Positions 11,732 to 34,129 of a stretch of 64,000 nt of DNA are shown one piece after another. The stretch covers positions 1,364,001 through 1,428,000 of the forward strand of contig CATNEN010000012.1 in assembly GCA_950097015.1 (NCBI GenBank), given 5' to 3'. The DNA comes from Macrostomum hystrix (lineage: Eukaryota; Animalia; Platyhelminthes). Each line of letters starts with the position of its first letter. Positions within the stretch are counted from its first letter, which is position 1. The notes below the pieces were generated by a model. That model was not told the DNA's origin. It ran no database searches and was given only the letters and a program-made list of their open reading frames with translations. The position numbers were made by a program, and so were the translations under genes.

Positions 11732-11773
<42 letters not shown>

Positions 11774-12409: not shown

Positions 12410-12925
12410 TAGTGTCTTCTAAATCCATGGAAGTGTCTTCTAAATCCGTGGAAGTGTCTTCTAAATCCATGGAAGTGTCTTCTAAATCCATGGAAGTGTC
12501 TTCTAAATCCATGGAAGTGTCTTCTAAATCCATGGAAGTGTCTTCTAAATCCATGGAAGTGTCTTCTAAATCCGTGGAAGTGTCTTCTAAATCCGTGGAA
12601 GTGTCTTCTAAATCCATGGAAGTGTCTTCTAAATCCATGGAAGTGTCTTCTAAATCCATGGAAGTGTCTTCTAAATCCATGGAAGTGTCTTCTAAATCCA
12701 TGGAAGTGTCTTCTAAATCCGTGGAAGTGTCTTCTAAATCCATGGAAGTGTCTTCTAAATCCATGGAAGTGTCTTCTAAATCCATGGAAGTGTCTTCTAA
12801 ATCCATGGAAGTGTCTTCTAAATCCATGGAAGTGTCTTCTAAATCCATGGAAGTGTCTTCTAAATCCATGGAAGTGTCTTCTAAATCCATGAAGTGTCTT
12901 CTAAATCCATAAAATGTTCTTCTAA
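12410..12925. repeat. 21-bp tandem array (GTGTCTTCTAAATCCATGGAA)
   Basis: Direct inspection; lies just after the RING-H2 stop codon. Confidence 0.97.
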
Positions 12926-14330: not shown

Positions 14331-14504
14331 TGGCTTAGTAAATGATTTAAAGCAATGACTTTGAGTGAGCTATAGATAAATAGAGTGAATATTGACTATA
14401 TAGTAGGGACAGTGTCGCCAGAGCGTTGACCTATTAAATCACATTCCCAGCTTGCATTGCAGCTCTGCAGAAACTAAACCCCAGTCAGAGCCAAAGCCCC
14501 AGCC

Positions 14505-15194
14505 ATGCTGCCGGCCCCCTTATTCGACTATCAGTTTCGCGTCATCATCATCGGGGACACGATGGTCGGCAAGTCCTCGCTTGTGCGCTACTTTGTCGAA
14601 GGCACCCCGGACACCGCCTGCGAGGCCACAGTTGGTGTTGATTTCTTTGCTCGAGTTGTCCAACTGCCCGACGGTTGCCGGGTGAAGCTGACACTGTGGG
14701 ACACGGCCGGGCACGAGAAATTCCGCTCCATCACCCGCTCCTATTATCGCAACGCTGTCGCAGCCTTGATAGTCTACGATGTCACCAATCGTTCTAGCTT
14801 GGCCAGCGTGCCTGCTTGGCTTAAAGAGGCCCGCCTGAATATGACCTGCACCGACCCCGGCCTGCTGCTGGTCGGCCAGAAAGCCGACATGACCAGCCAC
14901 AGAACGGTGGGCCGCGAGGAAGCCGTCAGCTTAGCCGACCAGTTGGGCTTGGCCTATGTTGAAACTTCCGCAATCAGCGGCCACAATGTGGAGGCCTGCT
15001 TTCGCGCCCTGGCCGAGCGGGTCTACTGCCTGCTCGTGGCTGGCCGCTACTCCGCAATGTCGCCCGACTGGGACGGCGTGCGAGTCGGTCGCGCCGCGGC
15101 GACTTCTTCTTTGCCGACTGCGGTTCGATTGACAGCTAATTATGGCGAATCTGGCGAAGCTGCCACTCAGTCCGGATCTGGCTGCTGTGCGTGA
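14505..15194 (+). CDS. RAB39: Rab39-like small GTPase, intronless, 229 aa
   Basis: YQFRVIIIGDTMVGKSS, TVGVDFFAR, LWDTAGHEKFRSITRSYYRN, ETSA, WDGVRVG and terminal CCA match the Rab39 subfamily pattern. Confidence 0.85.
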   Translation: MLPAPLFDYQFRVIIIGDTMVGKSSLVRYFVEGTPDTACEATVGVDFFARVVQLPDGCRVKLTLWDTAGHEKFRSITRSYYRNAVAALIVYDVTNRSSLASVPAWLKEARLNMTCTDPGLLLVGQKADMTSHRTVGREEAVSLADQLGLAYVETSAISGHNVEACFRALAERVYCLLVAGRYSAMSPDWDGVRVGRAAATSSLPTAVRLTANYGESGEAATQSGSGCCA

Positions 15195-15310: not shown

Positions 15311-15433
15311 GGAGTTTCTAGCCCTAGTGGTTAGAGCGTCGAACTCCAATACTTGAAGGTCGGGGGTTCGATTCCCGACTCCACTGAAACAATTCGTGTA
15401 TGAATTGTTATGCGTGTTAGTAAGACACTTAAT
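15311..15433 (+). mobile_element. SINE 5' fragment (tRNA head plus start of CORE)
   Basis: TAGTGGTTAGAGCG..GGTTCGATTCCCGACTCCACTG..TTAGTAAGACACTTAA, homologous to the 15553 copy. Confidence 0.75.
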
Positions 15434-15552
15434 ACAGTTTAGCTACAGGCTCAATATACTGTAATTACAGACTCGATATACTATAGTTACAGACTCCATA
15501 TGCTGTGCTTACAGACATGATATGCTGTAGATACAGACTCAATGTGCTGTAG

Positions 15553-15863
15553 GGAGGTTGTAGCCCAGTGGTCAGGGCGTCGGACTCACTACTTGAAGGT
15601 CGGTGGTTCGATTCCCGACTCCACTGTAACAATTTGTGTCCTTTAGCAAGGCACTTAACTCTGCATTGCTTCAGTTCACCCAGCTGTTAAATGTGTATCA
15701 GCACTAGCTGGGGTGATTGAGGGGTGGGGTAACTGGGGTGTGGCGTCCCCCCAGTCCATGGACTGAACAGCCGTACACAGCCTTCAGATGCGCCGCGCAA
15801 TAGCTGGGGCTGTGCTGTCGGCTGCATATCTGGCCCAATCAGGGGCAGATGTAATAAAAAAAT
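15553..15863 (+). mobile_element. tRNA-derived CORE-type SINE, near full length
   Basis: A-box-like AGTGGTCAGGGCG and B box GGTTCGATTCC, then GTGTCCTTTAGCAAGGCACTTAACTCTGCATTGCTTCAGTTCACCCAGCTGTTAAATG (MIR/CORE-like), ending in an A-rich tail. Several dispersed copies exist in the window. Confidence 0.8.
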
Positions 15864-16332
15864 CTATTTATTGAATTGTCTTTTCGGTTTTATTATAGAG
15901 TGATAGTTTAGTATTTTAGTATTTCCATCATTAGGCATTGTTTTTGCCAGTCTATCCAGAATATTCCAGTCTCTGCTGGTGCGTAAATGTACTTTTATTA
16001 GTTTTTCTAACAATCTGATCTGAATCTCTTGTCCTTTGCCTTGTGAACTCAGTATGTCTGCTAAGACCTTGTCCAGTTCTTTTATTAACAGCTGATCTGA
16101 ATTCCATTTTGCAAAGCCAATTCTGTGTTTGAATTATTTAAAATGTTTTTATTTTTAGTTTTAACTTTTGTATTCTCTAGATAAACTTGGATATGAAGGA
16201 ATAGATCATATTGCCAATCTATCAACATAGATTAACAGAAGATCACGCTGGTATTTCAACTACCCACAGCTTTCTTTATTTCTGTATCTCCCAAAATGTT
16301 CAACCAATAGCCTTGAAAATCCGAGTCCGATG

Positions 16333-16499
16333 TTAGGACGTCGGACTCACTACTTGAAGGTCAGGGGTTCGATTCCCGACTCCACTGTAACAATTTGTGC
16401 CTTTAGCAAGACGCGTAACTCTGGATTGCTTCAGTTCAGCCAGCTGTTAAATGGGTACCAGCATCAGCTGGGCCAATTGAGGGTGGGTGTGGCGTCCCC
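16333..16499 (+). mobile_element. 5' half of the SINE interrupted by the YR element
   Basis: Aligns to ~15570-15750 and stops abruptly at GGCGTCCCC. Confidence 0.85.
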
Positions 16500-17096
16500 T
16501 ATGTTAGCGGTGATGACACGAAACAAAGAAATGACGCACATCGTAGGGGATACCCGACAGGCCACATCACAGATATGACACTCCAAAAAAATATATCCGA
16601 CCAGAATATTTCGAAATATGACACATAAAAGTTTTGCAAAGAAACTGTAAATTTTGCATTATAAGCTACTAATAGTAGAAATGGGAAAATATTTCGGTCG
16701 CAGCTTTAAAGGGTTTGAGGTCAATCGTATTAGACACAAGTCCAGCTATTTCAGTTATATATATAAATTTATTATTTACTTTATTTTCATATTTTCAAAT
16801 TATATTTTATGTGCATACGAATTTTCAGTTACAAGTTTCAAATATTATATTATATTGACATGTTTCACAAGTTAGAAAATAGTTTTAATAGCATGTTGAA
16901 ATAGTACAAAAGCGCAGAAAAAGTGCAACAGAGAAAAAACCGCGCAGCACAGGTGTTGGCACCGCTGCTATGCATTAAATTGAGCTTGCCCAATCTGCTT
17001 TCGATCACTCTCCTAGAACTGTCTTCCTATAATCACCCTCTTTGAATCGATCAGAATCTGCTGCCTTCGTTTTTTGGCCTAATTAAGCGTAGAAAG

Positions 17097-20000
17097 TTAC
17101 ACAGAGTTCAGGAATCTGTCAATACGGTCTTCAGCACTTATTTTTGAAGCAGCTGCCATTTGCTCGAAGGCTTCTCTCAGCTCTTGTGATGCGCCTCGTG
17201 GTGCTGCCATTGAATTTTCCACGAACCGCCACTGGTGCAACCACGCACTTGACGGTGGGGCGTCGAAAAATTGCACATGCACATGTATCATGCTCACTCC
17301 TCTTGTGCATCTCGAACCGCGTCGTGGCAGACAAACCATTGCTGGCCACCAACATTCGCCATTGGTCGGCCAGTACCCTAGCACCAGCGTGCCAGGCTCC
17401 AGTTTCTGCCGTTTGCAGGATTGGTCGGCAGCTGGTGGCAGCCGCCTTTTGCGGGTTGCGCCCGCAGCCGACTCCGCGGGTAGATCAGCGCCAGCGACGC
17501 CAGAGGAGCCCGCAACCGACTCCGCGGGCAAATCAGCGCCAGCGACGCCAGAGGAGCCCGCAGCCGACTCCGTGGGCAGATCAGCGCCAGCGACGCCAGA
17601 GGAGCCCGCAACCGACTCCGCGGGCAGATCAGCGCCAGCGACGCCAGAGGAGCCCGCAGCCGACTCCGTGGGCAGATCAGCGCCAGCGACGCCAGAGGAG
17701 CCCGCAGCCGACTCCGCGGGCAGATCAGCGCCAGCGACGCCAGAGGAGCCTGCAGCCGACTCCGTGGGCAGATCAGCGCCAGCGACGCCAGAGGAGCCCG
17801 CAGCCGACTCCGCGGGCAGATCAGCGCCAGCGACGCCAGAGGAGCCCGCAGCCGAGCTGTACAATTCCTCAAGCAGCTCTTGGTTAAAATCTGCCAGCGA
17901 AGAAGAGAACGACAGATTTGTCAAGCTGTCGAGAAAGTCGCCAGCAGCAGCATTCTCAGGCAGAACGGCGCCGGCAGCAGCATTCCCAGGCAGAACGGCG
18001 CCAGCAGCAGCATTCTCAGGCAGAACGGCGCCAGCAGCAGCATTCTCAGGCAGAACGGCGCCAGCAGCAGCATTCTCAGGCAGAACGGCGCCAGCAGCAG
18101 CATTCTCAGGCAGAACGGCGCCGGCACTCGGCCGTTTCGCCTTCGGACCAGCCACCGAAGCGTCGGTTGTTTTCTGCCACCGGCACGGCTTGGCTTTGGC
18201 TTTTGCGGATGCGGTAGTGGCTGGCTTTCTGCGAATACCGCCGTCGGCAGCTAAAAAACGGTGTCATATTTGATAATGTATTTATATAATTGTTATAGCC
18301 TCTGCACCCATTATATTAAAAAAATATAATATAGAAAGTCGGTGCTACTTTCTTTATAGCACCGACACTGCGACTTGGCATACAAGCATACAGGTTTCGA
18401 TTCCCTTATGTCCTGACTCCCTGAGGTCCTGATTCACTTGGCCAAATTGACGAAATTCACTGAGGTCACAATTCATCAAAATCTCAATTCACAAAGCTTA
18501 TTTAACAATAATGCACTCACTGGCGGCGCAGTTAATTCTGCTCGCTAAGCTGCCAGCAGCCGATTGCAGGTCGTTGCCGAGTAGCGGAGCCTTGGCGTTT
18601 ACGTCCTCTTCACGCACGCCGGCGCCCTCTGTGACCAGTCGCTTTGTGAGCTGGCGGCCCTTCTCTCTTCTTTTCTTAGTCTGGGTCTGATTAGCAAAGT
18701 GGTGGGATAAAAAGGTTAATAATAATAAAAGCAAACTTAATTTTAACAATACATTCTTATTTGGACTCTTTTGTTTCATAATTTCTCAAAAAATACTATA
18801 CAGTGAAGCTTTTCAAAGAGTGAAAGTGAAGCTATTGCTAAAGCAAGTATATATGTATTAAAGCTTCCAGCTTGAGAAATTCCTAGTTCGTGAAGCGATT
18901 TTATAGATAACTTGAGTAAATCTTACCTGGTAAAATCGGCGCTGCACTCCTTCGGTGTGATTTTGATGGTCTGCCATCAAGCGCTGTTCTTCCGCCGTGG
19001 CGGATTCCAGACCCATCGTTTCCAGCCACTCGCGGAATTTAGAAACAGTGACATTGTGCAGCAGCGGTGAGTATCTTTTTCTATACTGGTAAAATAGGCG
19101 GTCGAAAGAGCCGTACGGGAATAGAAACGCCGGAGCGTCGTCGCTCGGGCTCTCCGCAAATCGTTGCGCCAGGACCTGCATCACCAGGTCTGCGCACGGC
19201 GTTACACTTGCCCACGCTGAGCCGTGGCCCTCATTTGATTTATGCTCTTTAACTTTGAGAGGCTCATTCGGCGACTTCAGCCACCGGCGTGCGTCCGAAA
19301 TTTTGCAGGCGGAGGCCACGCCCTGCCGGTTGGCGTTTCCATCGCCGAAACAAATACACATCCCGATGGCCAGGAATGTCACCGTCCTGTGTCAATGTTG
19401 AGGCCAAGATTTTTTCATCCCATGATTAAGTGCCATTTCAAAGATTAGGTGCCATTTCAAAGATTAGGTGCCATTTCAAAGATTAGGTGCCATTTCAAAG
19501 ATTAGGTGCCATTTCAAAGATTAGGTGCCATTTCAAAGATTAGGTGCCACTTCAAAATCTAAGTGCCACTTTAAAATCTAAGTGCCACTTCAAAATCTAA
19601 GTGCCACTTTAAAATCTAAGTGCCACTTCAAAATCTAAGTGCCACTTCAAAATCTAAGTGCCACTTCAAAATCTAAGTGCCACTTTAAAATCTAAGTGCC
19701 ACTTCAAAATCTAAGTGCCACTTCAAAATCTAAGTGCCACTTTAAAATCTAAGTGCCACTTCAAAATCTAAGTGCCACTTCAAAATCTAAGTGCCACTTC
19801 AAAATCTAAGTGCCACTTTAAAATCTAAGTGCCACTTCAAAATCTAAGTGCCACTTCAAAATCTAAGTGCCACTTCAAAATCTAAGTGCCACTTCAAAAT
19901 CTAAGTGCCACTTTAAAGATTATAAGAACTCACCGGTCTTTTGTGCGCCTAGCCTCCTCCAGGACGGTGGTCTTCATCTCGAAGACGGCCTTAATTTGGT

Positions 20001-22676
20001 CGCCGGTCATGAGCTCTTCTTCCTTCCGGTCCATCAGGTCCGCGTAATATTTTGCCTTGGGACCCATGGAACTAGCAGTCCAATTCTTTGTCGACTGCCT
20101 GTATGATGTTAAATGCTGCAGCAGCCCATCCTCAATCACTTGTTGATAGCGTCGGGTGACCATAAAGTTGCCGACTTTTTCCAGCGCAGAGACGCTCTGC
20201 TTGAGCATCGAGTAGGAAAGGTTATCCAAATACGCGCTGATTCGGTCGCGCTGGTCTTCGATGACCAGTGAGTTAAATGAGTCGATGTCAAGTGAGCGCA
20301 TCAGCCGCTTCAGGTAGCAACGAATTTCGCGTACCGTTGCCGGCTTCTTGCGCCCACCGAGAGAGCTGGCCAAGAATGCACAGAGTGCCTCAACGTCGTC
20401 TGTCGACGGGTGCTCGGCCACGGCTGGTCTAGCCGGCACTCTGCTTCTGGCCTCAGTCAGCTTCTGCTCCTTTGCAGCTCTTGCTGCGTCTGGGTGGCTG
20501 TTGCGTCTGTGGCTCGCCAGCAAATTTGTGTCGTTGCGCCACTCGCCGCAGATTTCGCACTGTACCGCCTTCTCTGCCATTGGGCCGGCAGTCAGCTGAT
20601 GCGTGTTAAGCTTAACAGAAGCACGCAGAATCTGGAGGGCTCTTTTGTGCAGAATAAATTCAGGAAGCCCATCCTTTGCCAGATTTTGTTTTGTCTCTTC
20701 GATCAGATTCATATGCGCTCTTTTGATGTGTTCACTAAAGCGGGACTCTTTGATTGGCATGCAGTCACCGAATGGGCAAATATACTCCTGCCCGGCACGC
20801 GACTTGGGCTGCTGAGCTGCGGCGGGCGGCTGCTGAGCTGCGGTGGGCGGCTGCTGAGCTGCGGTGGGCGGCTGCTGAGCTACGGTGGGCGGCTGCTGAG
20901 CTGCGGCGAGTGGCTGCTGAGCTGCGGTGGGCGGCTGCTGAGCTGCGGGGGGCGGCTGCTGAGCTGCGGTGGGCGGCTGCTGAGCTGCGGTGGGCGGCTG
21001 CTGAGCTGCGGGGGGCGGCTGCTGAGCTGCGGGGGGCGGCTGCTGAGCTGCGGGGGGCGGCTGCTGAGCTGCGGTGGGCGGCTGCTGAGCTGCGGCGAGT
21101 GGCTGCTGAGCTGCGGTGGGCGGCTGCTGAGCTGCGAGGGGCGGCTGCTGAGCTGCGGTGGGCGGCTGCTGAGCTGCGCCGGGCGGCTGCTGAGCTGAGC
21201 CGGGCTGAGACGCATCAGTCTGAGTAGAGAAATTGCAGTTATTGGTAGAGTAGAGGCAGGGCAGTGTGGTAGAGACAGGGCAATGTGGTAGAGACAGGGC
21301 AGTGTGGTAGAGACAGGGCAGTGTGGTAGAGACAGGGCAGTGTGGTAGAGACAGGGCAGTGTGGTAGAGACAGGGCAATGTGGTAGAGACAGGGCAGTGT
21401 GGTAGAGACAGGGCAGTGTGGTAGAGACAGGGCAGTGTGGTAGAGACAGGGCAGTGTGGTAGAGACAGGGCAGTGTGGTAGAGACAGGGCAGTGTGGTAG
21501 AGACAGGGCAGTGTGGTAGAGGCAGGGCAGTGTGGTAGAGGCAGGGCAGTGTGGTAGAGACAGGGCAATGTGGTAGAGACAGGGCAGTGTGGTAGAGACA
21601 GGGCAATGTGGTAGAGACAGGGCAGTGTGGTAGAGACAAGGCAATGTGGTAGAGACAGGGCAGTGTGGTAGAGACAGGGCAATGTGGTAGAGACAGGGCA
21701 GTGTGGTAGAGACAGGGCAGTGTGGTAGAGACAGGGCAATGTGGTAGATACAGGGCAGTGTGGTAGAGACAGGGCAATGTGGTAGAGACAGGGCAGTGTG
21801 GTAGAGACAGGGCAATGTGGTAGAGACAGGGCAGTGTGGTAGAGACAGGGCAGTGTGGTAGAGACAGGGCAGTGTGGTAGAGACAGGGCAATGTGGTAGA
21901 GACAGGGCAGTGTGGTAGAGACAGGGCAGTGTGGTAGAGACAGGGCAGTGTGGTAGAGACAGGGCAGTGTGGTAGAGACAGGGCAGTGTGGTAGAGGCAG
22001 GGCAGTGTGGTAGAGACAGGGCAATGTGGTAGAGACAGGGCAGTGTGGTAGAGACAGGGCAATGTGGTAGAGACAGGGCAGTGTGGTAGAGACAAGGCAA
22101 TGTGGTAGAGACAGGGCAGTGTGGTAGAGACAGGGCAATGTGGTAGAGACAGGGCAGTGTGGTAGAGACAGGGCAGTGTGGTAGAGACAGGGCAATGTGG
22201 TAGATACAGGGCAGTGTGGTAGAGACAGGGCAATGTGGTAGAGACAGGGCAGTGTGGTAGAGACAGGGCAATGTGGTAGAGACAGGGCAGTGTGGTAGAG
22301 ACAGGGCAGTGTGGTAGAGACAGGGCAGTGTGGTAGAGACAGGGCAATGTGGTAGAGACAGGGCAGTGTGGTAGAGACAGGGCAGTGTGGTAGAGACAGG
22401 GCAGTGTGGTAGAGACAGGGCAGTGTGGTAGAGACAGGGCAATGTGGTAGAGACAGGGCAGTGTGGTAGAGACAGGGCAATGTGGTAGAGACAGGGCAGT
22501 GTGGTAGGGACAGGGCAGTTATTAGTAAAAGTATGCTCTTCACTTTCACTTACCATTGACTGAAATCGATCAGACGCGGCGAGCTCTTTCTCAAACGACT
22601 TTTGCCGCTTAGCGACGTCATAGCGTTTGCCTTTGCGGCTTATCAGCTGTTTTATAAACTCAAATTGTTTGGACAT
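17097..22676 (-). CDS. Zinc-finger + tyrosine recombinase + PWWP protein (~1062 aa); exons 22676-22554, 21219-19934, 19386-18927, 18686-18521, 18250-17097
   Basis: All four introns are GT-AG with matching phases (0, 2, 0, 1); the 3189 nt join is open. Motifs: C2H2-like fingers (CPFGDC..H..H; CEIC..H..H); YR residues NANR, EHKS, SKFR, NH, FYQ; PWWP-like LVLGYW..CWWPAMV..HVQFFD.PPSSAW. Exon 1 and the start codon are less certain. Confidence 0.85.
17440..17860 (-). repeat. Coding 48-bp repeat (AAGSSGVAGADLPAES) within the YR-PWWP last exon
   Basis: Unit is a multiple of 3 and the frame is preserved. Confidence 0.9.
17935..18125 (-). repeat. Coding 30-bp repeat (GAVLPENAAA)
   Basis: Unit is a multiple of 3 and the frame is preserved. 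Confidence 0.9.
19430..19917. repeat. 19-bp array (AAGTGCCACTTCAAAATCT) in intron 2 of the YR gene
   Basis: Period 19; two sub-variants. Confidence 0.95.
20805..21200 (-). repeat. Coding 21-bp repeat (AQQPPxA)
   Basis: Frame preserved within exon 2. Confidence 0.9.
21245..22518. repeat. 19-bp array (GTGGTAGAGACAGGGCAGT) in intron 1 of the YR gene
   Basis: Period 19, ~66 copies. Confidence 0.97.
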
Positions 22677-22755
22677 TTGAATTATTATATATAGAAAAAA
22701 TGAAATTAATTGAGAATTAGAAATCTGGCTTTTTGAAAAGCCAGTTGAAGTCCCA

Positions 22756-22762
22756 TTTTATA
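22756..22762 (-). promoter_or_regulatory. Candidate TATA box for the YR-PWWP gene
   Basis: TATAAAA on the minus strand ~80 nt upstream of the ATG at 22676. Confidence 0.35.
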
Positions 22763-23111
22763 TGAAGTGGCAGTTTGACATCAACAAGTAATGTTCACTC
22801 TAATTTTTATTGGTTCGGAATGGGGTTGTCAAAATAATTTAACATTCATGGAACGTGTCAAACCCATTATGCTTTTAGACTCAAAAGGGGTGGACTGTCT
22901 CATTTCAGTAGTGACTCATTTTTACAGCATATTACTTTATTTCAAAATGAAAGATGTGCATCAACGAGTATGAAACATAGATTAGGTACAATGTGCCTCA
23001 CTCACATTCACTGCAGCCTGATTCACTGCCTGATTCACAGCCAGACTCACTGATCTAGTTTGGGTTTCGAATACTCAGTTATTTCTGCATTTTTTTTATT
23101 GCGTAGCCCTT

Positions 23112-23912
23112 GAGATCCGCTGCTGTCAATATACAGTGAGCAGTGGATAACACAGAAGTGACACACAATGGGAGAGATATACAGCTATTCAAAATGACAC
23201 AGACATGCTGCAAATCATAAACACTGTGAGATCCGCTGCTGTCAATATACAGTACGCAGTGGATAACACAGAAGTGACACACAATGGGAGGGATATACAG
23301 CTATTCAAAATGACACAGACATGCTGCAAATCATAAACACTGTGAGATCCGCTGCTGTCAATATACAGTACGCAGTGGATAACACAGAAGTGACACACAA
23401 TGGGAGGGATATACAGCTATTCAAAATGACACAGACATGCTGCAAATCATAAACACTGTGAGATCCGCTGCTGTCAATATACAGTACGCAGTGGATAACA
23501 CAGAAGTGACACACAATGGGAGGGATATACAGCTATTCAAAATGACACAGACATGCTGCAAATCATAAACACTGTGAGATCCGCTGCTGTCAATATACAG
23601 TAAGCAATGGATAACACAGAAGTGACACACAATGTGAGGGATATACAGCTATTCAAAATGACACAGACATGCTGCAAATCATAAACACTGTGAGATCCGC
23701 TGCTGTCAATATACAGTAAGCAGTGGATAACACAGAAGTGACACACAATGGGAGGGATATACAGCTATTCAAAATGACACAGACATGCTGCAAATCATAA
23801 ACACTGTGAGATCCGCTGCTGTCAATATACAGTACGCAGTGGATAACACAGAAGTGACACACAATGGGAGGGATATACAGCTATTCAAAATGACACAGAC
23901 ATGCTGCAAATC
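23112..23912. repeat. 116-bp tandem array 1 (~7 units)
   Basis: GAGATCCGCTG at 23112, 23228, 23344 and onward. Confidence 0.97.
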
Positions 23913-24607
23913 TTAAGCGCTGTGAAATCATTCACAGCCTCATTCACAGCCTTATTCACACTCACAACTTTATTCACAGCCTCACTCACATTCACAGCCC
24001 CACTCACATTCGCAGCCTCACTTACATTCACAGCCTTACTCACATTCACAGCCTCATTCACATCTTCACTAACATTCATAGCCACATTTACAACCTCGTG
24101 CACAGCACAAACCTTGAGACCGAAACAGAAGCTCGATTTTTTCGACATTTCGCAACAGTTGGAGAGGCCTAAAACTGGGGGTGCTAACGGCATTGCGCAA
24201 GAATATTGGTATTGTTAATGTAAGTATTGTAGTCAAAAAAAGATACGTTTATATCAACCTGGTGTCAATAATGAACAGTGTAGCTTCATGACTGCATGCA
24301 AAACTGTCAATCACACCTCCAACAGATAAGGACCAAAAACAGATTGAGTATTACTTACCCCAGAACTGCGTTCCTATTAAAAATAAAACACTAACACAAA
24401 AAGGGGATTATTGCGCAATCATGACAATTACCTGGTTCAAGTCAAGCAAGGCATAACTTGCTTTAAAGCTAGCTCACCCGATCTAATTCACAGCCTCATT
24501 CACATTCACTGCCTCATTCAGTACCTCATTCACAGCCAGACTCACTGATCTAGTTTGGGTTTCGAATACTCAGTTTTTCAGCATTTTTAATTCATTGAGT
24601 AGCCCTT

Positions 24608-27148
24608 GAGATCCGCTGCTGTCAATATACAGTACGCAGTGGATAACACAGAAGTGACACACAATGGGAGGGATATACAGCTATTCAAAATGACACAGAC
24701 ATGCTGCAAATCATAAACACTGTGAGATCCGCTGCTGTCAATATACAGTACGCAGTGGATAACACAGAAGTGACACACAATGGGAGAGATATACAGCTAT
24801 TCAAAATGACACAGACATGCTGCAAATCATAAACACTGTGAGATCCGCTGCTGTCAATATACAGTACGCAGTGGATAACACAGAAGTGACACACAATGGG
24901 AGGGATATACAGCTATTCAAAATGACACAGACATGCTGCAAATCATAAACACTGTGAGATCCGCTGCTGTCAATATACAGTACGCAGTGGATAACACAGA
25001 AGTGACACACAATGGGAGAGATATACAGCTATTCAAAATGACACAGACATGCTGCAAATCATAAACACTGTGAGATCCGCTGCTGTCAATATACAGTACG
25101 CAGTGGATAACACAGAAGTGACACACAATGGGAGGGATATACAGCTATTCAAAATGACACAGACATGCTGCAAATCATAAACACTGTGAGATCCGCTGCT
25201 GTCAATATACAGTACGCAGTGGATAACACAGAAGTGACACACAATGGGAGAGATATACAGCTATTCAAAATGACACAGACATGCTGCAAATCATAAACAC
25301 TGTGAGATCCGCTGCTGTCAATATACAGTACGCAGTGGATAACACAGAAGTGACACACAATGGGAGGGATATACAGCTATTCAAAATGACACAGACATGC
25401 TGCAAATCATAAACACTGTGAGATCCGCTGCTGTCAATATACAGTACGCAGTGGATAACACAGAAGTGACACACAATGGGAGAGATATACAGCTATTTAA
25501 AATGACACAGACATGCTGCAAATCATAAACACTGTAAGATCCGCTGCTGTCAATATACAGTGAGCAGTGGATAACACAGAAGTGACACACAATGGGAGGG
25601 ATATACAGCTATTCAAAATGACACAGACATGCTGCAAATCATAAACACTGTGAGATCCGCTGCTGTCAATATACAGTACGCAGTGGATAACAAAGAAGTG
25701 ACACACAATGGGAGGGATATACAGCTATTCAAAATGACACAGACATGCTGCAAATCATAAACACTGTAAGATCCGCTGCTGTCAATATACAGTGAGCAGT
25801 GGATAACACAGAAGTGACACACAATGGGAGGGATATACAGCTATTCAAAATGACACAGACATGCTGCAAATCATAAACACTGTGAGATCCGCTGCTGTCA
25901 ATATACAGTACGCAGTGGATAACACAGAAGTGACACACAATGGGAGGGATATACAGCTATTCAAAATGACACAGACATGCTGCAAATCATAAACACTGTG
26001 AGATCCGCTGCTGTCAATATACAGTGAGCAGTGGATAACACAGAAGTGACACACAATGGGAGGGATATGCAGCTATTCAAAATGACACAGACATGCTGCA
26101 AATCATAAACACTGTGAGATCCGCTGCTGTCAATATACAGTACGCAGTGGATAACAAAGAAGTGACACACAATGGGAGAGATATACAGCTATTCAAAATG
26201 ACACAGACATGCTGCAAATCATAAACACTGTGAGATCCGCTGCTGTCAATATACAGTACGCAGTGGATAACAAAGAAGTGACACACAATGGGAGAGATAT
26301 ACAGCTATTCAAAATGACACAGACATGCTGCAAATCATAAACACTGTGAGATCCGCTGCTGTCAATATACAGTACGCAGTGGATAACAAAGAAGTGACAC
26401 ACAATGGGAGAGATATACAGCTATTCAAAATGACACAGACATGCTGCAAATCATAAACACTGTGAGATCCGCTGCTGTCAATATACAGTACGCAGTGGAT
26501 AACACAGAAGTGACACACAATGGGAGGGATATACAGCTATTCAAAATGACACAGACATGCTGCAAATCATAAACACTGTGAGATCCGCTGCTGTCAATAT
26601 ACAGTAAGCAATGGATAACACAGAAGTGACACACAATGGGAGGGATATACAGCTATTCAAAATGACACAGACATGCTGCAAATCATAAACACTGTGAGAT
26701 CCGCTGCTGTCAATATACAGTAAGCAATGGATAACACAGAAGTGACACACAATGGGAGGGATATACAGCTATTCAAAATGACACAGACATGCTGCAAATC
26801 ATAAACACTGTGAGATCCGCTGCTGTCAATATACAGTACGCAGTGGATAACACTGAAGTGACACACAATGGGAGGGATATACAGCTATTCAAAATGACAC
26901 AGACATGCTGCAAATCATAAACACTGTGAGATCCGCTGCTGTCAATATACAGTAAGCAATGGATAACACAGAAGTGACACACAATGGGAGGGATATACAG
27001 CTATTCAAAATGACACAGACATGCTGCAAATCATAAACACTGTGAGATCCGCTGCTGTCAATATACAGTAAGCAATGGATAACAAAGAAGTGACACACAA
27101 TGGGAGGGATATACAGCTATTCAAAATGACACAGACATGCTGCAAATC
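24608..27148. repeat. 116-bp tandem array 2 (~22 units), same unit as array 1
   Basis: Identical unit; explains the series of 69-aa MCHFCVIH ORFs. Confidence 0.97.
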
Positions 27149-27154
27149 TTAAGC

Positions 27155-27540
27155 GCTGTGAAATCATTCACAGCCTCATTCACAGCCTTATTCACACTCA
27201 CAACTTTATTCACAGCCTCACTCACATTCACAGCCCCACTCACATTCGCAGCCTCACTTACATACACAGCCTTACTCACATTCACAGCCTCACTCACATT
27301 TATAGCCTCACTCACATTCACAGCCTCACTCACATTTACAGCCTCACTCACATTCACAGCCTCACTCACATTCACAGCCTCACTTACATTTACAGCCTCA
27401 CTCACATTCACAGCCTCACTCACATTCACAGCCTCACTCACATTCACAGTCTCACTTACATTTGCAGCCTCACTCACATTCACAGCCTTACTTACATTCA
27501 CAGCCTCACTCACGTTTACATTTATGGCCTCATTCGCAGT
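27155..27540. repeat. 18-bp TTCACAGCCTCACTCACA repeat (shorter copy at 23920-24090)
   Basis: Follows each 116-bp array. Confidence 0.85.
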
Positions 27541-27836
27541 CTTACATGTATATACAGCTTTTTCACATCTTTACCCACACTTTTGGTGTGTTAATATTTT
27601 GATTTTAAGATTAAAAAGTTATTGTTAGTTGGTACAATTAAAAAGATATGTACCAAGACTATTGGCAGTAGTTTTTCAGATTTTGTTCTGCTTTTTGCGA
27701 TTAGAACTTAAATTCTGTCTTTGTTTTGCAGTGCTTAAATATACACTATTTTTTTAATTCAGTTTTTACGCAAGCATGGATCTTGGTTTTTACGCATATA
27801 TCTCATGCGTAATTTCTCATTCTGGCGTCATACAAA

Positions 27837-27950
27837 CCCCCCCCAGTCCATGGACTGAACAGCCGTACGCAGCCTTCAGATGCGCCGCGCAATAGCTGGG
27901 GCTGTGCTGTCGGCTGCACATCTGGCCCAATAGGGGCAGGTGTAATCAAT
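27837..27950 (+). mobile_element. 3' half of the SINE interrupted by the YR element
   Basis: Near-identical to ~15747-15855 and has no SINE head upstream. Confidence 0.85.
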
Positions 27951-28584: not shown

Positions 28585-28855
28585 TGTAGCCCAGTGGTTA
28601 GGGCGTCGGACTCACTAATTGAAGGTCGGGGGTTCGATTCCCGGCTCCACAGGAACAATTTGTTTCCTTTAGCAAGGCACTTAACTCTGCATTGCTTCAT
28701 TTCACCCAGCTGTTAAATGTGTATCAGCACTAGCTGGGGCCGTTGCGTCCCCACAGTCCGTGGACCGAACAGCTGTACGCAGCCTTCATATGCAATAGCT
28801 GCGGCTGTGCTGTCGGCTGCACATCTGGCCCGATTGGGGCAGGCGTAATCAATTA
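28585..28855 (+). mobile_element. CORE-type SINE copy
   Basis: TGTAGCCCAGTGGTTAGGGCG..GGTTCGATTCC..TTTAGCAAGGCACTTAACTC..GGCTGTGCTGTCGGCTGCACATCTGGCCC. Confidence 0.8.
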
Positions 28856-29324
28856 TTTTATATTATTACTATTGCTCTCTTCAGACTGAGAGTGATTGGC
28901 ATTTGCCATAATTGTTAAACTGCCTTTCCGCTTGGCATATTCTTTTTCAGCCTAAGCAGGCCATTGTTATGTCTTCTAATTTATATTCTCTGCTGTGTAT
29001 TGTATAAACAGTTTAGCACAATTAAACTCTGCCATGTCACTTCGCAAGTACAGATAAACAGATATAAACAGCACATCTTTAGTGTCAATAAGAAATAAAG
29101 TTATTAGAAGTATAAACAGAACATACACATAGTACAAGTATCATTTCGGAACGATCATTAAAGTGTAACTCCAGCTACTAATGCAAAGCAATTTGGATTT
29201 ATCCTTTATTCGCTTCTGAAAAAAACTGGTGTCGGCAAACTCCGGCTACCTCCAGATGCGGTCTGCAAAGCTACAATTTGTTCTGAATATGTCACCTGGC
29301 CCTCCCTCACCTGTCCCATCTCTC

Positions 29325-30195: not shown

Positions 30196-30674
30196 CCATT
30201 TTGCCGCAGGTTGCCGTCTCTTGCTGATATAAAGCAGGTAAAATATATTCTGGTCGGGCTATGTATATTAGCAAGTTATGCAGAAATTTAGGCACGCAAT
30301 TTCAAGGGAAGAGTGGGTAAGATATTCCCATGCTTCGTTATACAATATTTCGCTTAGTTTATTTTCTCGCTAGTTTCAGACATCGCAAAACTTTATAGTA
30401 CTCGTAAGTATAACTCATATTTTTATATTCTCCTATCTCTGGTATTTTTCATTCTTTAATCCCCCCCTGGACCCAGACAAGATAAATGCCAATCGCAATT
30501 AGCTAATCCGTGGGCAGGTAGCAGGGCAGGTATGTACACAACTCTTGATCACTCGGGTTGGCGGACAAGAAAGGCGTTCGGAAACCTGTACAGAAAATGT
30601 TGGATTTGTTCCAACTCTTAGTCAGTGCAATTTCGGCTTGAGTGAACTACAAGTCTGTGACCTTCTCTGGCAGC

Positions 30675-31762
30675 TTATGTACAGGCTGTGATCTGGCTGC
30701 GTGATGCAGCAGCTGCAGCAGCTCGGTCCTTTCCTGTGCCATTCGTTGCAGCTCCATTCGGCCACTCTTCTCCTGCTGAACCAGCTTCTTCAGATCCTGT
30801 GGGAATCACAATCAAACCAGTTGAAAGCTCCTCCTGTTCTATCCAATCATTGAAGCCTTCTTTTTCTTTACTTTCTCCAGCCAATCACAGACATCCACAC
30901 GATCGAGTAAAAAAGTCCATAGCCAATCGCAAACATCCACGCCTTCGAGTTAGAAAATAGCCATAGCCAATCGCAGCCATCCACGCCATCGAGTTAAAAA
31001 ATATCCATAGCCAATCACAGACATCCAGGCCTTCGAGTTAAAAAATATCCATTTCCAACAACATCCACATAGCCAACATAACAAATCACCGACACTACTA
31101 CCAATTACCAACAAGTGCAATGTTCGCCTGCCCGCAATTACCTCGCTAAGCCTGTTATAGAGTCTCCGCATCTCCTCCAGCTGCTCCTGCAGGCAGTGCT
31201 CCCTCTGCACCAGGTGGCGCCGCTGCGCGTCTAGGCGCAGGTCCATTTCCAGCTTCTGCTCTGCCAGCTTGGCCATGAAGTCCTGCCTGGCCGCCTCCAG
31301 CTGTGTGCGCATGTCTTCCAGCAGTCGGGCCACGTCGGCAGCCGGCACCACCGCGGAGGTGCGCAGGTTGCAGATCTGCAGGTGGCAGGCCATCTGGCCA
31401 CGGCTTGTGTCTGTCCGGCAGGCCGGGCAGCGCATCGGCTCGCACGGGCAAGTGGACTCGTGCTGCAGCACGGACTCCAGCGGCACCTTCTCGCGACAGC
31501 CGTGCTGCCAGAATTGGCAGCGGATCTGCAACCCGTTGAGGTCGTTTCTCATGTAGCGATGGAGCTGGCGCAGCTCGCTAGCCAGAAGGATCTGCCGGTC
31601 CACCGGGCACGAGTTGTCCTCCAGCAGCCAGGCCTGGATGCAGGCAGAGCAGAAGGCGTGCTCGCAGGGCGCTTGGACGGCCTCCTCCAGGACGTCGTGA
31701 CAGATGGCGCACAGGAGGCCTTCGTTCACCTCTTCCTCGAAGCGGTCGACGTCGAAGCCCAT
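30675..31762 (-). CDS. RNF41/Nrdp1-like RING plus TRAF-type zinc-finger protein; exon 31762-31142 and probable last exon 30833-30675
   Basis: MGFDVDRF..LLCAICHDVLEEAVQAPCEHAFCSACI..W..CPVDR..MRN.L..LQIRC matches the RNF41 N-terminus. GAG|GTAATT donor at 31141. The last exon is in phase 0 but low complexity. Confidence 0.8.
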
Positions 31763-34129
31763 GATTTCCTAGCTGCGCTGTTGGCCTGGTAGCAACTGCT
31801 GCCAATGCACTGTGGCGCAGTGCTTTTATAGATTCCGTCTCTTGACAAAATTGGTGTCGAGACCCAACCCGCTGCCTCTTGGAGTTGCTCAATTGGATTG
31901 AGATACTGCTTGAGCATCGGCCTGAGCAGTCCCGCCTTCTCTCTCTCTTCTCTCTCTGTTGTTTTTGCCTTAGCAACTCTATGCGTACCATTTTCCTATT
32001 CTCAAAGGCTTCAATGAGACAACAACAGCAGCCACCATAAACATTGTTAAATTCTTTTCATTTGTCTGCTGGCATACCTGAGTACCCAAAGATGGCACTC
32101 TGTGCTAGTCTCTACCCCTCTCTCTATCTCTATGTCGAGTCTATAGGAAACGCCCGCGCTGAGCTACCGTGAGTACTGTGTGCATTTTTGGTAGATTTCA
32201 GTTCAAACTAAAACACAGAGTTAGGAAAGACAATGAAATAATGGCCTGTTTTAGTTGTTGGATTGGCTATCCAAGCTGCACCTAGAAACCTATTGACACA
32301 CACAGAAACTGAAGACTTTGCCAGGCATTCAAGAGAGCGGCAACTCAAGCATCAATTGGGATAAAGGGACGATGAAATTGAATGGACTCAGGCAAAAAGT
32401 GGCATTTTTTCTTCCCTTGAGACCGCCTGTCGTGTGTTTAGTATTTTACGGGAGCAAGCATTGCCCATTGCAGGTGGGGATTAGCCATGGACACGAAGTA
32501 TGGATTTGCTATTTTAATGTTTCCGCTTTCATTTTGAGCACAATTCGCCCACTTTCCCAGCTGGAATTTGAGCACTGCCTACTAGGTGAGGCATTTTTCA
32601 ACATTATAAACAACTGCTCAAATTCATTGGGCCCTGAATACAATTGTGAATGCCTGCGCTGTCGCTGGATTCCCGACACTTTAACGCAATGGGCTCAGAG
32701 CAACTCACCGAGAGGAAGAGACACGTAGGAAGACAGATGGGTCACATCCCCTCCACTTGCGCCCAGTGACAAGTGGGAAAAGAGTCCACTCACTCCCCAG
32801 TCTGTCCGGCAGTCTCATCCCATTGCATTGGGACCAACTGGAGGGCCACTGCTGTCCGGAGGTGAGGGGAGGAGGGTCGCAAAGATGAGACACAGGAGAC
32901 TGCGAATTGGAGGAGGGCTTTGAGGACGAGCCACGGGCCAGTGAGGAGAGAAATAGGCACTGCCACACTCACACACAAAAAACTGGCCCTCCAGCCTCCT
33001 CCGCGTCCCAGATTCCGCGTCGATGCGAAGCGGCCGGTGCTGCAGCCGCCCCTTATCTTGTCTTTCCCCTCAAGCAGACTCCCCTCTGCATCAAACTTTG
33101 CTCCGACAGGGGCCCGGCAGTTCAAGTTATCCAGTTTCACTTTGCAACCCCGAGACCATCCCTTGCCCTCGCCGAGGGCAATACTCCCAAGGCCAGCCTT
33201 CCTGGTGCCAGTTCTGCTCAAATCTCCCGCTTGTCCCACCTTTCCAAAGAAGCCCCGCGCGCTGCAACACCGGAAACAGACTGCGAGAGTAGACAAAGAA
33301 AGCATTTTTGCTGCTCAGATACCACACGCCAGGCAGAGCTGAAAGTGGAGTAAACACTTCCTAGTGTTTTTTTCGCTCAGCTTCCGTCGGTCGCATCTCC
33401 GGTTTCCACTCGGTGTGTTTTTTGCAGACTATTTAAAGCTAACTCTTTATAGTCTGACGGCACGACTAGAAACTCGCCATAATGTCGTCGAGTGTCGTCA
33501 CCAGCCTGATGGCTGGCTGCCTTCTGGTCTGCGTCGTACCCGCCGTTTCAAGTGAGTCTTGCACCGGTAAAAATATGATTGGTTTCGAAGGTGAATCAAG
33601 AAGCTGAGTCTAGCTGCCGTTTTTTTCCCTGTCTTGAAGCAGCAACAGGGACGCACAAGACCTGCCTCTCCCAGTCCCTCCCGAGTCAAAGTCGCTCCCA
33701 GCGTGTGTATGAATTATTTATGAGCCCGGCGGCTGGCGTTGAACTTATCTCTCCGCCGCAGCTTCTGTGCATGCCGCCGCGATGCTGCGCACTCAGCCAG
33801 CCAGCTTTGGCGACTGCCACAGCGGAACATGTTTACGACCTCATTCAGGCCTTCTATCACTTCAGCATCTGACGCTTGGTGGGTATTAGCCAACCCAGCC
33901 ACCTCACCCAATGCCTGTCAGCTGGAGCAATGTGCGCGGGTGAATTATAATCCTCACAATTCACAGTGTTATCCCCGCGACCACCTCGCGGTGCTATGAA
34001 CCAGATGGGATGCTCAGACAGATGAGCAGTTTGGCAGGGATTTGCGAGTGCTAAAACTGTGCCAGTCCTGCTGTTTGTGGGACTAGCTGCTCTCCTGCTT
34101 GTGTGATCAATGCAAAGGAACAGCTATCC

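What the first reader, a model, noticed from the sequence alone, without database searches (positions are those of the whole stretch)
16500..27836. Self-delimited 11.3 kb tyrosine-recombinase element with no RT: a candidate new Crypton-like family
Seen: a SINE is cut in two (5' half ends 16499, 3' half resumes 27837), so everything between is one insertion. It holds a single intact 5-exon gene encoding a YR, plus tandem arrays. I find no RT/RNase H/gag, DDE transposase, capsid, polB or long TIR/LTR. Known: DIRS/Ngaro YR retroelements carry RT; Cryptons are intron-containing YR-only DNA elements usually a few kb long. Inference: this is a large, recently active YR DNA element. Intact splice sites and a well-preserved SINE 3' half argue for recent insertion.
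Basis: partly seen in the sequence, partly recalled or inferred. Interest (0 to 1): 0.95.

Follow-up and report, generated by a model that had tools for sequence, protein, structure and literature searches.

The report
New flatworm tyrosine-recombinase transposon family
An 11.3 kb piece of DNA that split a short repeat in a Macrostomum-like flatworm genome is a one-gene mobile element whose enzyme has a tyrosine-recombinase fold but matches no catalogued family, and near-identical dispersed copies of a relative in Macrostomum lignano show that this kind of element moves.

Summary
One tRNA-derived SINE is cut at 16499/27837, and intact copies lie at 15571-15858 and 28597-28856. The 11,337 bp between the halves carries one intact five-exon gene on the minus strand (1062 codons, all introns GT-AG). 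About 59% of the insert is tandem arrays. There is no room for a second enzyme, and there are no TIRs or LTRs.

No sequence library recognises the protein (Pfam, NCBIfam, PHROGs, PDB sequences), and only six true relatives turned up among 1.84 billion representatives. A structure model of one relative matches only tyrosine recombinases (XerA, Cre, IntI, lambda Int, VLF-1). R, K, R, H and Y are invariant with Cre/XerD-like spacing, but the His of the HxxR motif is Ser/Thr.

The syntenic Rab39-RING interval of M. lignano lacks the gene. M. lignano itself holds three dispersed copies of a related one-gene element. They are 99.2-99.8% identical, have sharp ends and a 4-bp terminal direct repeat, and all three ORFs are intact.

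Both elements carry a short motif clustered at the ends in inverted orientation and once per unit of the array upstream of the gene. The window's protein additionally ends in a PWWP domain.

Verdict: a Crypton-like tyrosine-recombinase DNA transposon of an apparently undescribed family. Mobility of this particular copy is inferred, not shown.

The parts
16332..16499 (+). 5' part of the split tRNA-derived SINE; it ends in 4 C
   Evidence: 84-85% identical to the 5' parts of the intact copies at 15571-15858 and 28597-28856
27837..27949 (+). 3' part of the same SINE; it begins with 8 C
   Evidence: 95.5% and 85.6% identical to the 3' parts of the intact copies. It resumes at the SINE position where the 5' part stops.
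16500..27836 (-). The inserted element (11,337 bp). In gene orientation: upstream end, 116-bp and 18-bp arrays, five-exon recombinase gene, downstream end.
   Evidence: No part of it recurs elsewhere in the window. No TIR or LTR.
17097..22676 (-). Intact five-exon gene, 1062 codons. Exons: 22676-22554, 21219-19934, 19386-18927, 18686-18521, 18250-17097.
   Evidence: all introns GT-AG, phases consistent, no internal stop. Relatives are collinear across the exon 2/3 junction.
20494..20784 (-). Two zinc-finger-like motifs (residues 187-210 and 262-283 of the model). The second is a canonical C-x2-C-x12-H-x4-H finger.
   Evidence: shared by all full-length relatives. Only a weak Pfam zf-Di19 hit.
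19934..20490 (-). Helical N-terminal (core-binding-like) recombinase domain, in exon 2
   Evidence: Alignment A4. The relative's model is helical here and superposes on the N-terminal domains of XerA and Cre.
18927..19386 (-). Exon 3: catalytic domain with the family-invariant residues R490, K519, R588, H613 and Y622. The residue three before R588 is Ser where canonical enzymes have His.
   Evidence: these columns are invariant in 7 of 7 sequences. Spacing is 29 / 69 / 25 / 9 residues.
17226..17366 (-). Core of the PWWP domain at the C-terminus (exon 5)
   Evidence: Pfam PF00855, E 2.7e-5, 25.0 bits against a cut-off of 25.6. PDB MSH6 PWWP E 5e-5, and NSD2/NSD3 PWWP.
16513..16624 (+). Cluster of four ATGACRC motifs at the gene-downstream end of the element
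   Evidence: 4 copies in 112 bp, against 4 copies in the 52.7 kb outside the element
27825..27831 (-). The same motif in inverted orientation, 5 nt from the gene-upstream terminus. It overlaps a 7-mer (TGGCGTC) that also precedes the C-run in the SINE target.
23111..27165 (+). 116-bp satellite in two blocks (23111-23929, 7 units; 24607-27165, 22 units). Each unit holds one ATGACAC. Each block is followed by an 18-bp array (23929-24097; 27165-27513).
21250..22519 (.). 19-bp array (about 67 copies) that fills intron 1. A different 19-bp array at 19427-19917 fills intron 2.
17460..18126 (-). Coding 48-bp (17460-17855) and 30-bp (17932-18126) arrays in exon 5. Exon 2 holds a coding 21-bp array at 20807-21197.
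14505..15194 (+). Host Rab39 gene (intronless ORF); left anchor of the synteny comparison
   Evidence: Pfam Ras 1.2e-45. 83% identical to M. lignano Rab39. Collinear with L006.
30651..31763 (-). Host RING-finger gene; right anchor of the synteny comparison
   Evidence: 92% amino-acid identity to the M. lignano gene that follows Rab39

Best explanation
The 11.3 kb insert is a Crypton-like DNA transposon: a one-gene element that moves by its own tyrosine recombinase.

What is shown. The element is bounded by a split SINE and encodes one intact protein. That protein has two zinc fingers, a core-binding-like domain, a catalytic domain of tyrosine-recombinase fold and a C-terminal PWWP domain. The gene is missing from the syntenic locus of M. 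lignano. A related one-gene element in M. lignano is a young dispersed repeat with defined ends.

What is inferred. The recombinase binds the short motif (ATGACRC) that is clustered at one end and inverted at the other. It pairs the joined ends of an excised circular copy with a chromosomal site that shares a few bases of identity, here a C-run next to a partial copy of the motif in the SINE. It then exchanges strands through Tyr622. This leaves the short C-run repeat on both sides and no conventional target-site duplication.

The motif-bearing 116-bp array upstream of the gene may act as an accessory binding platform. The PWWP domain may tether the enzyme to methylated chromatin and so bias where the element lands. 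Both of these ideas are conjecture.
For: - Precise split of one SINE, with about 6 extra C at the junctions.
- Intact 1062-codon, five-exon gene.
- Only six real relatives among 1.84e9 representative proteins (plus a spurious seventh hit, P0001); five of them are full-length and share the architecture.
- AF2 model of relative P0004: pLDDT 73.6. The top 11 PDB matches are all tyrosine recombinases: XerA (prob 1.00), Cre, IntI, lambda Int and Tn1549 Int. The top viral-library matches are VLF-1 and integrases.
- R, K, R, H and Y are invariant in 7 of 7 sequences. Their spacing of 29/69/25/9 is like Cre and XerD; those comparison numbers come from established knowledge.
- Synteny: Rab39 to RING is 6.6 kb in M. 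lignano with no homologue, and 15.5 kb here, of which 11.3 kb is the insert.
- The M. lignano relatives L002, L007 and L008 are 99.2-99.8% identical over 7.5-8.4 kb with unrelated flanks. Two sit in introns of host genes. A 4-bp direct repeat (CCAT) lies at the ends. Each has one intact 725-726 aa ORF.
- Parallel cis-layout. In both elements a short motif lies forward at the gene-upstream end, reverse at the gene-downstream end, and reverse once per unit of the upstream array. Relative L004 has a similar motif array upstream of its ORF.
- Cryptons are described as recombining a short terminal sequence with a near-identical target (PMC3212892; PMC9977147).
Against: - No second copy of this element was seen, so its ends are defined by the SINE alone.
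- No empty-site allele and no circle junction were examined.
- No sequence profile links the protein to any recombinase family. The fold match has modest E-values (0.016 against PDB, 0.002 against BFVD) and was made on a relative, not on the window's protein.
- The His of HxxR is Ser/Thr in the whole family.
- The C-run repeat is a homopolymer (4 versus 8 C), so it could be slippage or an ordinary short duplication.
- Minisatellites are frequent throughout the window, so arrays as such are not specific to the element.
- The exon 3-4-5 joins, and hence the PWWP fusion, rest on open reading frame and splice signals only.
- The closest relatives are only 28-33% identical.
Confidence: 0.75

Rival explanations
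1. The gene is a host (domesticated) recombinase-derived chromatin protein (zinc fingers plus PWWP). It reached this site passively, by a segmental insertion or on another mobile element, and the encoded enzyme did not move the 11.3 kb.
For: - Crypton recombinases have been domesticated repeatedly as DNA-binding regulators (PMC3212892).
- The PWWP domain and zinc fingers are typical of chromatin proteins.
- The His of HxxR is missing.
- Only one copy is seen in the window.
Against: - All other catalytic candidates are invariant, including the Tyr, whereas domesticated DUF3504 proteins lost most of them (PMC3212892).
- The gene is absent from the syntenic M. lignano interval.
- Relatives with the same Ser/Thr substitution are 99%-identical dispersed copies with sharp ends.
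- The motif is clustered at exactly the two ends of the insert.
Confidence: 0.1
2. The segment is a remnant of an integrated episome or virus-like element whose integrase is the only gene left.
For: The best matches in the viral structure library are VLF-1 of nudiviruses and baculoviruses and integrases of giant viruses and phages.
Against: - These matches are at fold level only (10-15% identity), as for any tyrosine recombinase.
- There is no capsid, polymerase or packaging gene and no room for one.
- No relative was found in 2.9 million viral contigs.
- The gene has spliceosomal introns.
- The M. lignano copies are complete at 7.5-8.4 kb with a single ORF.
Confidence: 0.04
3. It is a DIRS/Ngaro-type retroelement derivative that has lost its reverse transcriptase.
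For: DIRS-like elements are the commonest recombinase-bearing elements of animals (PMC4157794; PMC3212892).
Against: - No RT, RNase H or methyltransferase remnant, and no inverted or split direct terminal repeats.
- The gene contains introns, which a retrotransposed copy would lack.
- The intact M. lignano relatives also have only the recombinase ORF.
Confidence: 0.03
4. The two SINE pieces are independent truncated copies and nothing was inserted; the region between them is ancestral.
For: SINE copies are dense here (four within 13 kb once the insert is discounted). The two halves differ in identity to the neighbouring copy (84% versus 95.5%).
Against: - The pieces have the same orientation and break at the same SINE position within the C-run. 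Together they measure 281 bp, against 260-288 bp for intact copies.
- The M. lignano interval is 6.6 kb, which fits this locus without the 11.3 kb.
Confidence: 0.03

Closest known systems
Crypton DNA transposons (Goodwin et al. 2003; Kojima & Jurka 2011, PMC3212892; activity seen in Chlamydomonas, PMC9977147)
   Same: - A tyrosine recombinase is the only enzyme.
- No RT.
- No TIRs or long terminal repeats.
- Short (4-6 bp) direct repeats at the ends, taken as the recombination substrate.
- Low copy number.
- Introns in the gene.
   Different: - The recombinase is not recognisably related in sequence to any catalogued family (no DUF3504, GCR1_C or Phage_integrase hit).
- Ser/Thr stands in place of the tetrad His.
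- Two N-terminal zinc fingers.
- A C-terminal PWWP domain, whereas animal Cryptons are described as having no C-terminal domain.
- 11.3 kb long, with a motif-bearing satellite upstream of the gene.
Related one-gene element of Macrostomum lignano (loci L002, L007, L008; proteins PAA91811.1 and PAA87763.1, annotated as hypothetical)
   Same: - Same protein architecture apart from the PWWP.
- Same catalytic residues.
- Same layout: end, tandem array, gene, end.
- Same orientation pattern of a terminal motif.
- Short terminal direct repeat.
   Different: - Only 25-28% identity in the catalytic domain.
- Different motif (TTACAGG versus ATGACRC) and different terminal repeat (CCAT versus a C-run).
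- 451-bp rather than 116-bp array.
- Intronless ORF.
- No PWWP.
Prokaryotic and viral tyrosine recombinases (XerA, Cre, IntI, lambda Int, Tn1549 Int, VLF-1)
   Same: Predicted two-domain fold. Order and spacing of the R, K, R, H/W and Y residues.
   Different: - 10-15% identity.
- No profile-level sequence match.
- His of HxxR replaced.
- Extra zinc fingers and PWWP.
- Eukaryotic gene with introns.
Chromatin tethering of integration machinery (LEDGF/p75 PWWP with lentiviral integrase, PMC4176367; chromodomain integrases of chromoviruses, from general knowledge)
   Same: A reader domain for methylated chromatin is associated with an enzyme that inserts DNA.
   Different: Here the PWWP would be fused in cis to a tyrosine recombinase of a DNA transposon. 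Its function is untested, and the fusion rests on a splice model.

Membership tests
Tyrosine recombinase superfamily | Two-domain fold (helical core-binding domain plus catalytic domain) | tested here: met
   AF2 model of relative P0004 (pLDDT 73.6). The top 11 PDB matches are all tyrosine recombinases, with probabilities up to 1.00 and E 0.016. BFVD top matches are VLF-1 and integrases. The test was made on a relative that aligns with the window's exons 2-3, not on the window's own protein.
Tyrosine recombinase superfamily | Catalytic Arg-I, Lys, Arg-II, His/Trp-III and nucleophilic Tyr in the canonical order and spacing | tested here: met
   R490, K519, R588, H613 and Y622 are invariant in 7 of 7 sequences. 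Spacing is 29/69/25/9, compared from established knowledge with Cre (28/91/23/9) and XerD (24/75/23/9).
Tyrosine recombinase superfamily | His of the HxxR motif (the H of the R-H-R-Y tetrad) | tested here: not met
   The position three residues before Arg-II is Ser in the window and Thr in 6 of 6 relatives.
Tyrosine recombinase superfamily | Match to a curated sequence model (Pfam Phage_integrase and related, NCBIfam, PHROGs) or to a solved recombinase by sequence | tested here: not met
   No hit.
Crypton (class of recombinase-only DNA transposons) | Recombinase is the only enzyme; no RT/RNase H; no TIR or LTR | tested here: met
   Unique non-gene DNA totals only about 1.9 kb.
Crypton (class of recombinase-only DNA transposons) | Short (4-6 bp) direct repeats at both termini | tested here: inconclusive
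   Window: 4 C on the left and 8 C on the right, against 6 C in the intact SINE. This is a homopolymer, so it is ambiguous. M. lignano relative: CCAT at the left end, and directly after the right end in 2 of 3 copies.
Crypton (class of recombinase-only DNA transposons) | Several copies with identical ends and unrelated flanks | not testable with these tools
   The source genome is not in the collections and there is no other copy in the window. The feature is met for the M. lignano relative.
CryptonA / CryptonV (animal Cryptons) | Recombinase of the DUF3504 type; no C-terminal domain (PMC3212892) | tested here: not met
   No DUF3504 hit for the window's exons or for any relative. A PWWP domain is present at the C-terminus.
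CryptonF | C-terminal GCR1_C DNA-binding domain | tested here: not met
   No Pfam hit.
DIRS / Ngaro / PAT / VIPER retroelements | RT and RNase H next to the recombinase; inverted or split direct terminal repeats | tested here: not met
   The M. lignano relatives also have a single ORF.
Starship (fungal giant elements) | Captain recombinase of the DUF3435 type at one end, plus cargo genes | tested here: not met
   No DUF3435 hit and no cargo genes.
PWWP domain | Match to the PWWP profile or to solved PWWP domains | tested here: met
   PDB MSH6 PWWP E 5e-5, and NSD2/NSD3 PWWP. Pfam PF00855 E 2.7e-5, but 25.0 bits is just under the 25.6-bit cut-off.
tRNA-derived SINE | tRNA-related head, about 300 bp, dispersed copies | tested here: met
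   Rfam tRNA hit of 29.3 bits on the head of the intact copy. Four copies or fragments in the window, 81-95% identical.

The most novel reading that the evidence does not exclude
This is the first sighting of a previously unrecognised superfamily of eukaryotic tyrosine-recombinase DNA transposons. Its features would be:
- a non-canonical active site, with Ser/Thr for the tetrad His;
- two N-terminal zinc fingers;
- its own binding motif at the ends and in an upstream array.

In this lineage the recombinase has also fused to a PWWP reader that steers integration towards methylated chromatin. That would be the first transposon-encoded PWWP tether.
Probability: 0.3. Interest if true: 0.8.

Novelty: new variant of a known kind. 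Interest (0 to 1): 0.68.

Why it matters
Recombinase-only DNA transposons (Cryptons) are rare and poorly understood. They are also the source of several conserved animal regulators, such as the ZMYM/WOC and KCTD1 families.

This family is almost invisible to sequence searches: six real relatives in 1.84 billion proteins and no profile hit. Yet it is young and multi-copy in a laboratory flatworm, M. lignano. That widens the known diversity of eukaryotic recombinase elements. It also offers a tractable natural system in which ends, target choice and binding motifs can be read directly from the copies.

The missing tetrad His bears on what the minimal recombinase active site is. The cis-fused PWWP, if real, would be a new example of a mobile element borrowing a chromatin reader to choose where it lands.

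For genome annotation, it shows that 'hypothetical proteins' of Macrostomum inside host introns are transposon genes.

Tried and rejected
- Sequence libraries gave no recombinase hit. I scanned Pfam, NCBIfam and PHROGs, and ran PDB sequence searches with single exons and with the family profile.
- Single-sequence AF2 of exon 3 was useless (pLDDT 42) and I did not search with it.
- The word-indexed protein search with the exon-2 region found nothing. With the family profile it returned only two members already known.
- P0001, the top HMMER hit, is a translated tandem repeat that sums 14 weak matches. I rejected it as spurious.
- Viral contigs held no relative. JGI metagenomes held one intron-bearing relative, L005. 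L009 holds only partial, weak matches.
- The search for terminal inverted or direct repeats in the outer 400 bp found nothing above chance.
- An exact look-up of the window's Rab39 protein to locate the source genome found nothing on record.
- The SINE was not found in about 115 kb of fetched loci, about 91 kb of it from M. lignano.
- I first thought the arrays were element-specific. The window as a whole is full of minisatellites, so only the motif-bearing 116-bp array is argued to belong to the element's machinery.
- Not done: database searches and a structure prediction with the full joined 1062-residue protein. A joined sequence has no reference, and long strings may not be pasted into calls. 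The exons were joined only inside a script, to test the splice model.
- Not done: a recombinase phylogeny against Crypton A/F/I/S/V, DIRS, Ngaro and Starship captains. No comparator sequences could be fetched with the searches that remained.
Full report
**1. The observation**

BLASTN of the candidate SINE pieces against the window and a MAFFT alignment show two intact copies of a 260-290 bp repeat at 15571-15858 and 28597-28856. Rfam scores the head of the first copy as tRNA (29.3 bits at 15554-15623). A third copy is divided. Its 5' part is 16332-16499 and its 3' part is 27837-27949, on the same strand. The two parts meet at the same SINE position, inside a C-run.

The intact copy has six C at that position. 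The split copy has four C before the insert and eight after it, so about six extra C flank the insert. The two parts add up to 281 bp, against 260 and 288 bp for the intact copies.

**2. What the insert holds**

On the minus strand I derived a five-exon model from the sequence and tested it by joining the exons as they stand in a script. The exons are 22676-22554, 21219-19934, 19386-18927, 18686-18521 and 18250-17097. All four introns are GT-AG, the phases agree, and the product has 1062 residues with no internal stop.

Relatives found later are collinear across the exon 2/3 junction. The exon 3-4-5 joins rest on reading frame and splice signals only.

Introns 1 and 2 are almost entirely 19-bp arrays. 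Exons 2 and 5 contain coding 21-, 30- and 48-bp arrays. Upstream of the gene lies a 116-bp satellite in two blocks of 7 and 22 units. Each block is preceded by a similar leader and followed by an 18-bp array. Arrays make up about 59% of the insert.

Every ORF of 80 residues or more is an exon or a translated array. The unique non-gene DNA is about 1.9 kb in four pieces, so there is no room for RT, a DDE transposase, a capsid or a polymerase. There are no terminal inverted or long direct repeats, and no part of the insert recurs elsewhere in the window.

**3. Is the protein a tyrosine recombinase?**

No sequence library says so. Pfam, NCBIfam, PHROGs and PDB sequence searches gave nothing for the exons, for the relatives or for a family profile.

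HMMER with exon 3 against 1.84 billion representative proteins found only seven hits. One of them, P0001, is a translated tandem repeat and is spurious. Five are full-length proteins that are 28-33% identical over the whole exon. They include hypothetical proteins of Macrostomum lignano.

These relatives share the window's architecture: two zinc-finger-like motifs, a helical domain and the exon-3 domain.

An AlphaFold2 model of the most compact relative, built from the eight-row alignment, reached a mean pLDDT of 73.6. Foldseek against the PDB returned tyrosine recombinases as its top eleven matches: XerA (probability 1.00, E 0.016), Cre, the integron integrase, lambda Int and Tn1549 Int. Against the viral structure library it returned VLF-1 and integrases.

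Five residues are invariant in all seven sequences, in the order and spacing expected of the active site. In the 1062-residue model they are R490, K519, R588, H613 and Y622, with gaps of 29, 69, 25 and 9 residues. From established knowledge, Cre has gaps of 28, 91, 23 and 9 and XerD has 24, 75, 23 and 9.

The one departure is the His of HxxR. It is Ser in the window and Thr in all six relatives.

I therefore accept 'tyrosine recombinase' at the level of fold and active-site layout. Two reservations stand: the fold test was made on a relative, and the E-values are modest.

**4. The C-terminal domain**

The last about 110 residues match PWWP domains. Pfam gives E 2.7e-5 (25.0 bits, cut-off 25.6). 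PDB sequences of the MSH6 PWWP give E 5e-5, and NSD2 and NSD3 also match. None of the relatives has this domain.

**5. Host and synteny**

The intronless Rab39 ORF at 14505-15194 is 83% identical to Rab39 of M. lignano, far above any other species. The window therefore comes from a macrostomid flatworm close to, but distinct from, M. lignano.

The M. lignano Rab39 locus (L006) is collinear with the window for four genes. In M. lignano the Rab39 to RING interval is 6.6 kb and contains no homologue of the recombinase. In the window it is 15.5 kb, of which 11.3 kb is the insert.

The best M. lignano match to the window's recombinase is only 25-28% identical, whereas the neighbouring genes are 83-92% identical.

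**6. The family is mobile in M. lignano**

The three M. lignano proteins lie on three contigs (L002, L007, L008). The loci are 99.2-99.8% identical over a discrete 7.5-8.4 kb segment, and the similarity stops sharply on both sides even though 10 kb of flank was available. Two copies sit inside introns of unrelated host genes.

The copies differ in the number of units of a 451-bp array upstream of the ORF. Each copy has a single intact 725-726 residue ORF and nothing else.

At the ends, the left boundary starts with CCAT. The same four bases follow the right boundary in two copies, and the third copy has a shortened version. This is the signature described for Cryptons: short terminal direct repeats taken as the recombination substrate, and no TIRs (PMC3212892). 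It also fits the donor/target microhomology seen in active Chlamydomonas Cryptons (PMC9977147).

**7. A shared cis-layout**

In the window, the 7-mer ATGACRC occurs:
- four times within 112 bp at the gene-downstream end (16513-16624);
- once in inverted orientation 5 nt from the gene-upstream terminus (27825-27831);
- once in each of the 29 satellite units.

It occurs only four times in the 52.7 kb outside the element.

In the M. lignano element a different motif, TTACAG(G), occurs:
- five times at the gene-upstream end;
- twice, inverted, in the last 35 bp;
- once per 451-bp unit.

Read in gene orientation, both elements show the same pattern: forward at the upstream end, and reverse in the array and at the downstream end. 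A metagenomic relative (L004) has six ATGAC-type motifs in an array upstream of its ORF.

I read these motifs as protein-binding sites of the element's own machinery. That is inference.

In the window, the 7-mer TGGCGTC overlaps the terminal motif and also precedes the C-run in the SINE target. This would fit integration at a pseudo-site, but a chance match is not excluded.

**8. Most likely mechanism**

Shown:
- a bounded insertion;
- one intact gene of recombinase fold;
- absence from the syntenic locus;
- relatives that are young dispersed repeats with short terminal direct repeats.

Inferred:
- excision as a circle;
- binding of the recombinase to the inverted end motifs;
- strand exchange through Tyr622 with a target that shares a few bases with the joined ends (here the C-run);
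- as a result, a short repeat on both sides.

Conjecture:
- the motif-bearing array acts as an accessory binding platform;
- the PWWP domain tethers the enzyme to methylated chromatin. This would be analogous to LEDGF/p75 for lentiviral integrase (PMC4176367), but fused in cis.

**9. Caveats**

- No other copy of this element could be sought.
- The C-run is a homopolymer.
- Minisatellites are common all over the window, so the intronic and coding arrays probably reflect the genome's general habit.
Recency is suggested only by the intact 1062-codon frame and the homogeneous arrays (97-98% between units).

**10. Comparison and novelty**

The element works like a Crypton and meets the class-level definition. 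It fails the membership tests for every named group that I could test:
- no DUF3504 (CryptonA/V);
- no GCR1_C (CryptonF);
- no RT (DIRS, Ngaro);
- no DUF3435 (Starship).

It also differs in the tetrad His, the zinc fingers, the PWWP domain and the motif array.

Full-text searches found no paper that links Macrostomum with Cryptons or tyrosine recombinases in this sense, and none that pairs a Crypton or tyrosine recombinase with PWWP. Repbase could not be consulted.

I rate it a new variant of a known kind, with an interest score of 0.68.

**11. Conduct**

The only joining was of the five predicted exons as they stand, inside a script, to test the splice model. The gene is not broken, so there are no breaks to count.

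Noticed in passing
window 4982-6330, 10485-12352, 14504-15091, 30651-31763: Four host genes (an Arf/Ras-like gene, a RING gene, Rab39 and a second RING gene) are collinear with M. lignano contig NIVC01000946.1. Coding identity is 79-86% at the nucleotide level and 83-92% at the protein level. The window therefore comes from a close relative of M. lignano, not from M. lignano itself.
   Followed up: yes
whole window, e.g. 6725-8846, 12411-12956, 29312-30195, 39505-40546, 46088-48309, 52206-54154, 57665-58907, 59598-60965: The window is packed with minisatellite arrays of 13-50 bp units. TRF returns about 30 rows scoring above 600; some rows overlap and describe the same array. Many of the long 'ORFs' are translations of such arrays.
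   Followed up: partly
window 15418-15552 versus 46110-47107: A short 22-bp array next to the SINE cluster is the reverse complement (79-84%) of a 1 kb array 31 kb away.
   Followed up: no
window 52104-54154: A 17-bp array of about 115 copies with extreme GC skew (+0.65 in the 2 kb window).
   Followed up: no
window 15330-15398, 15571-15858, 16332-16499 plus 27837-27949, 28597-28856: Four copies or fragments of the same tRNA-derived SINE lie within about 2.3 kb of host sequence once the insert is discounted. The family was not found in about 115 kb of fetched loci, about 91 kb of it from M. lignano.
   Followed up: partly
window 16491-16497 and 27824-27830: The 7-mer TGGCGTC lies just before the C-run in the SINE target and also just inside the element's terminus, where it overlaps the inverted end motif. 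It is either a possible pseudo-site or a chance match.
   Followed up: partly
L002 8912-9175 (and the same place in L007 and L008): A 264-bp segment with 57-nt inverted arms (93% complementary) sits inside the M. lignano element, about 430 bp from its left end. It looks like a nested MITE or a hairpin.
   Followed up: no
L002 10448-13602: The 451-bp array of the M. lignano element appears to repeat the 5' coding exon. The annotated proteins carry a short N-terminal segment several times over, so the gene models PAA91811.1 and PAA87763.1 probably run through the array.
   Followed up: partly
L003 and L004 (ENA ERZ23491819, same sample): Two different intronless paralogues of the recombinase (624 and 698 residues) come from one metagenome, on AT-rich contigs (32-33% GC) of an unidentified eukaryote.
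   Followed up: partly
L001 10001-13876: The best-scoring HMMER hit, P0001, is a 1291-residue translation of a tandem repeat on a 312 kb eukaryote-like metagenomic contig. It is not related to the recombinase.
   Followed up: yes
window 49180-51042, 59662-60906, 61269-61973: Long ORFs with no Pfam hit. At least the first two overlap tandem arrays and are probably not genes.
   Followed up: partly
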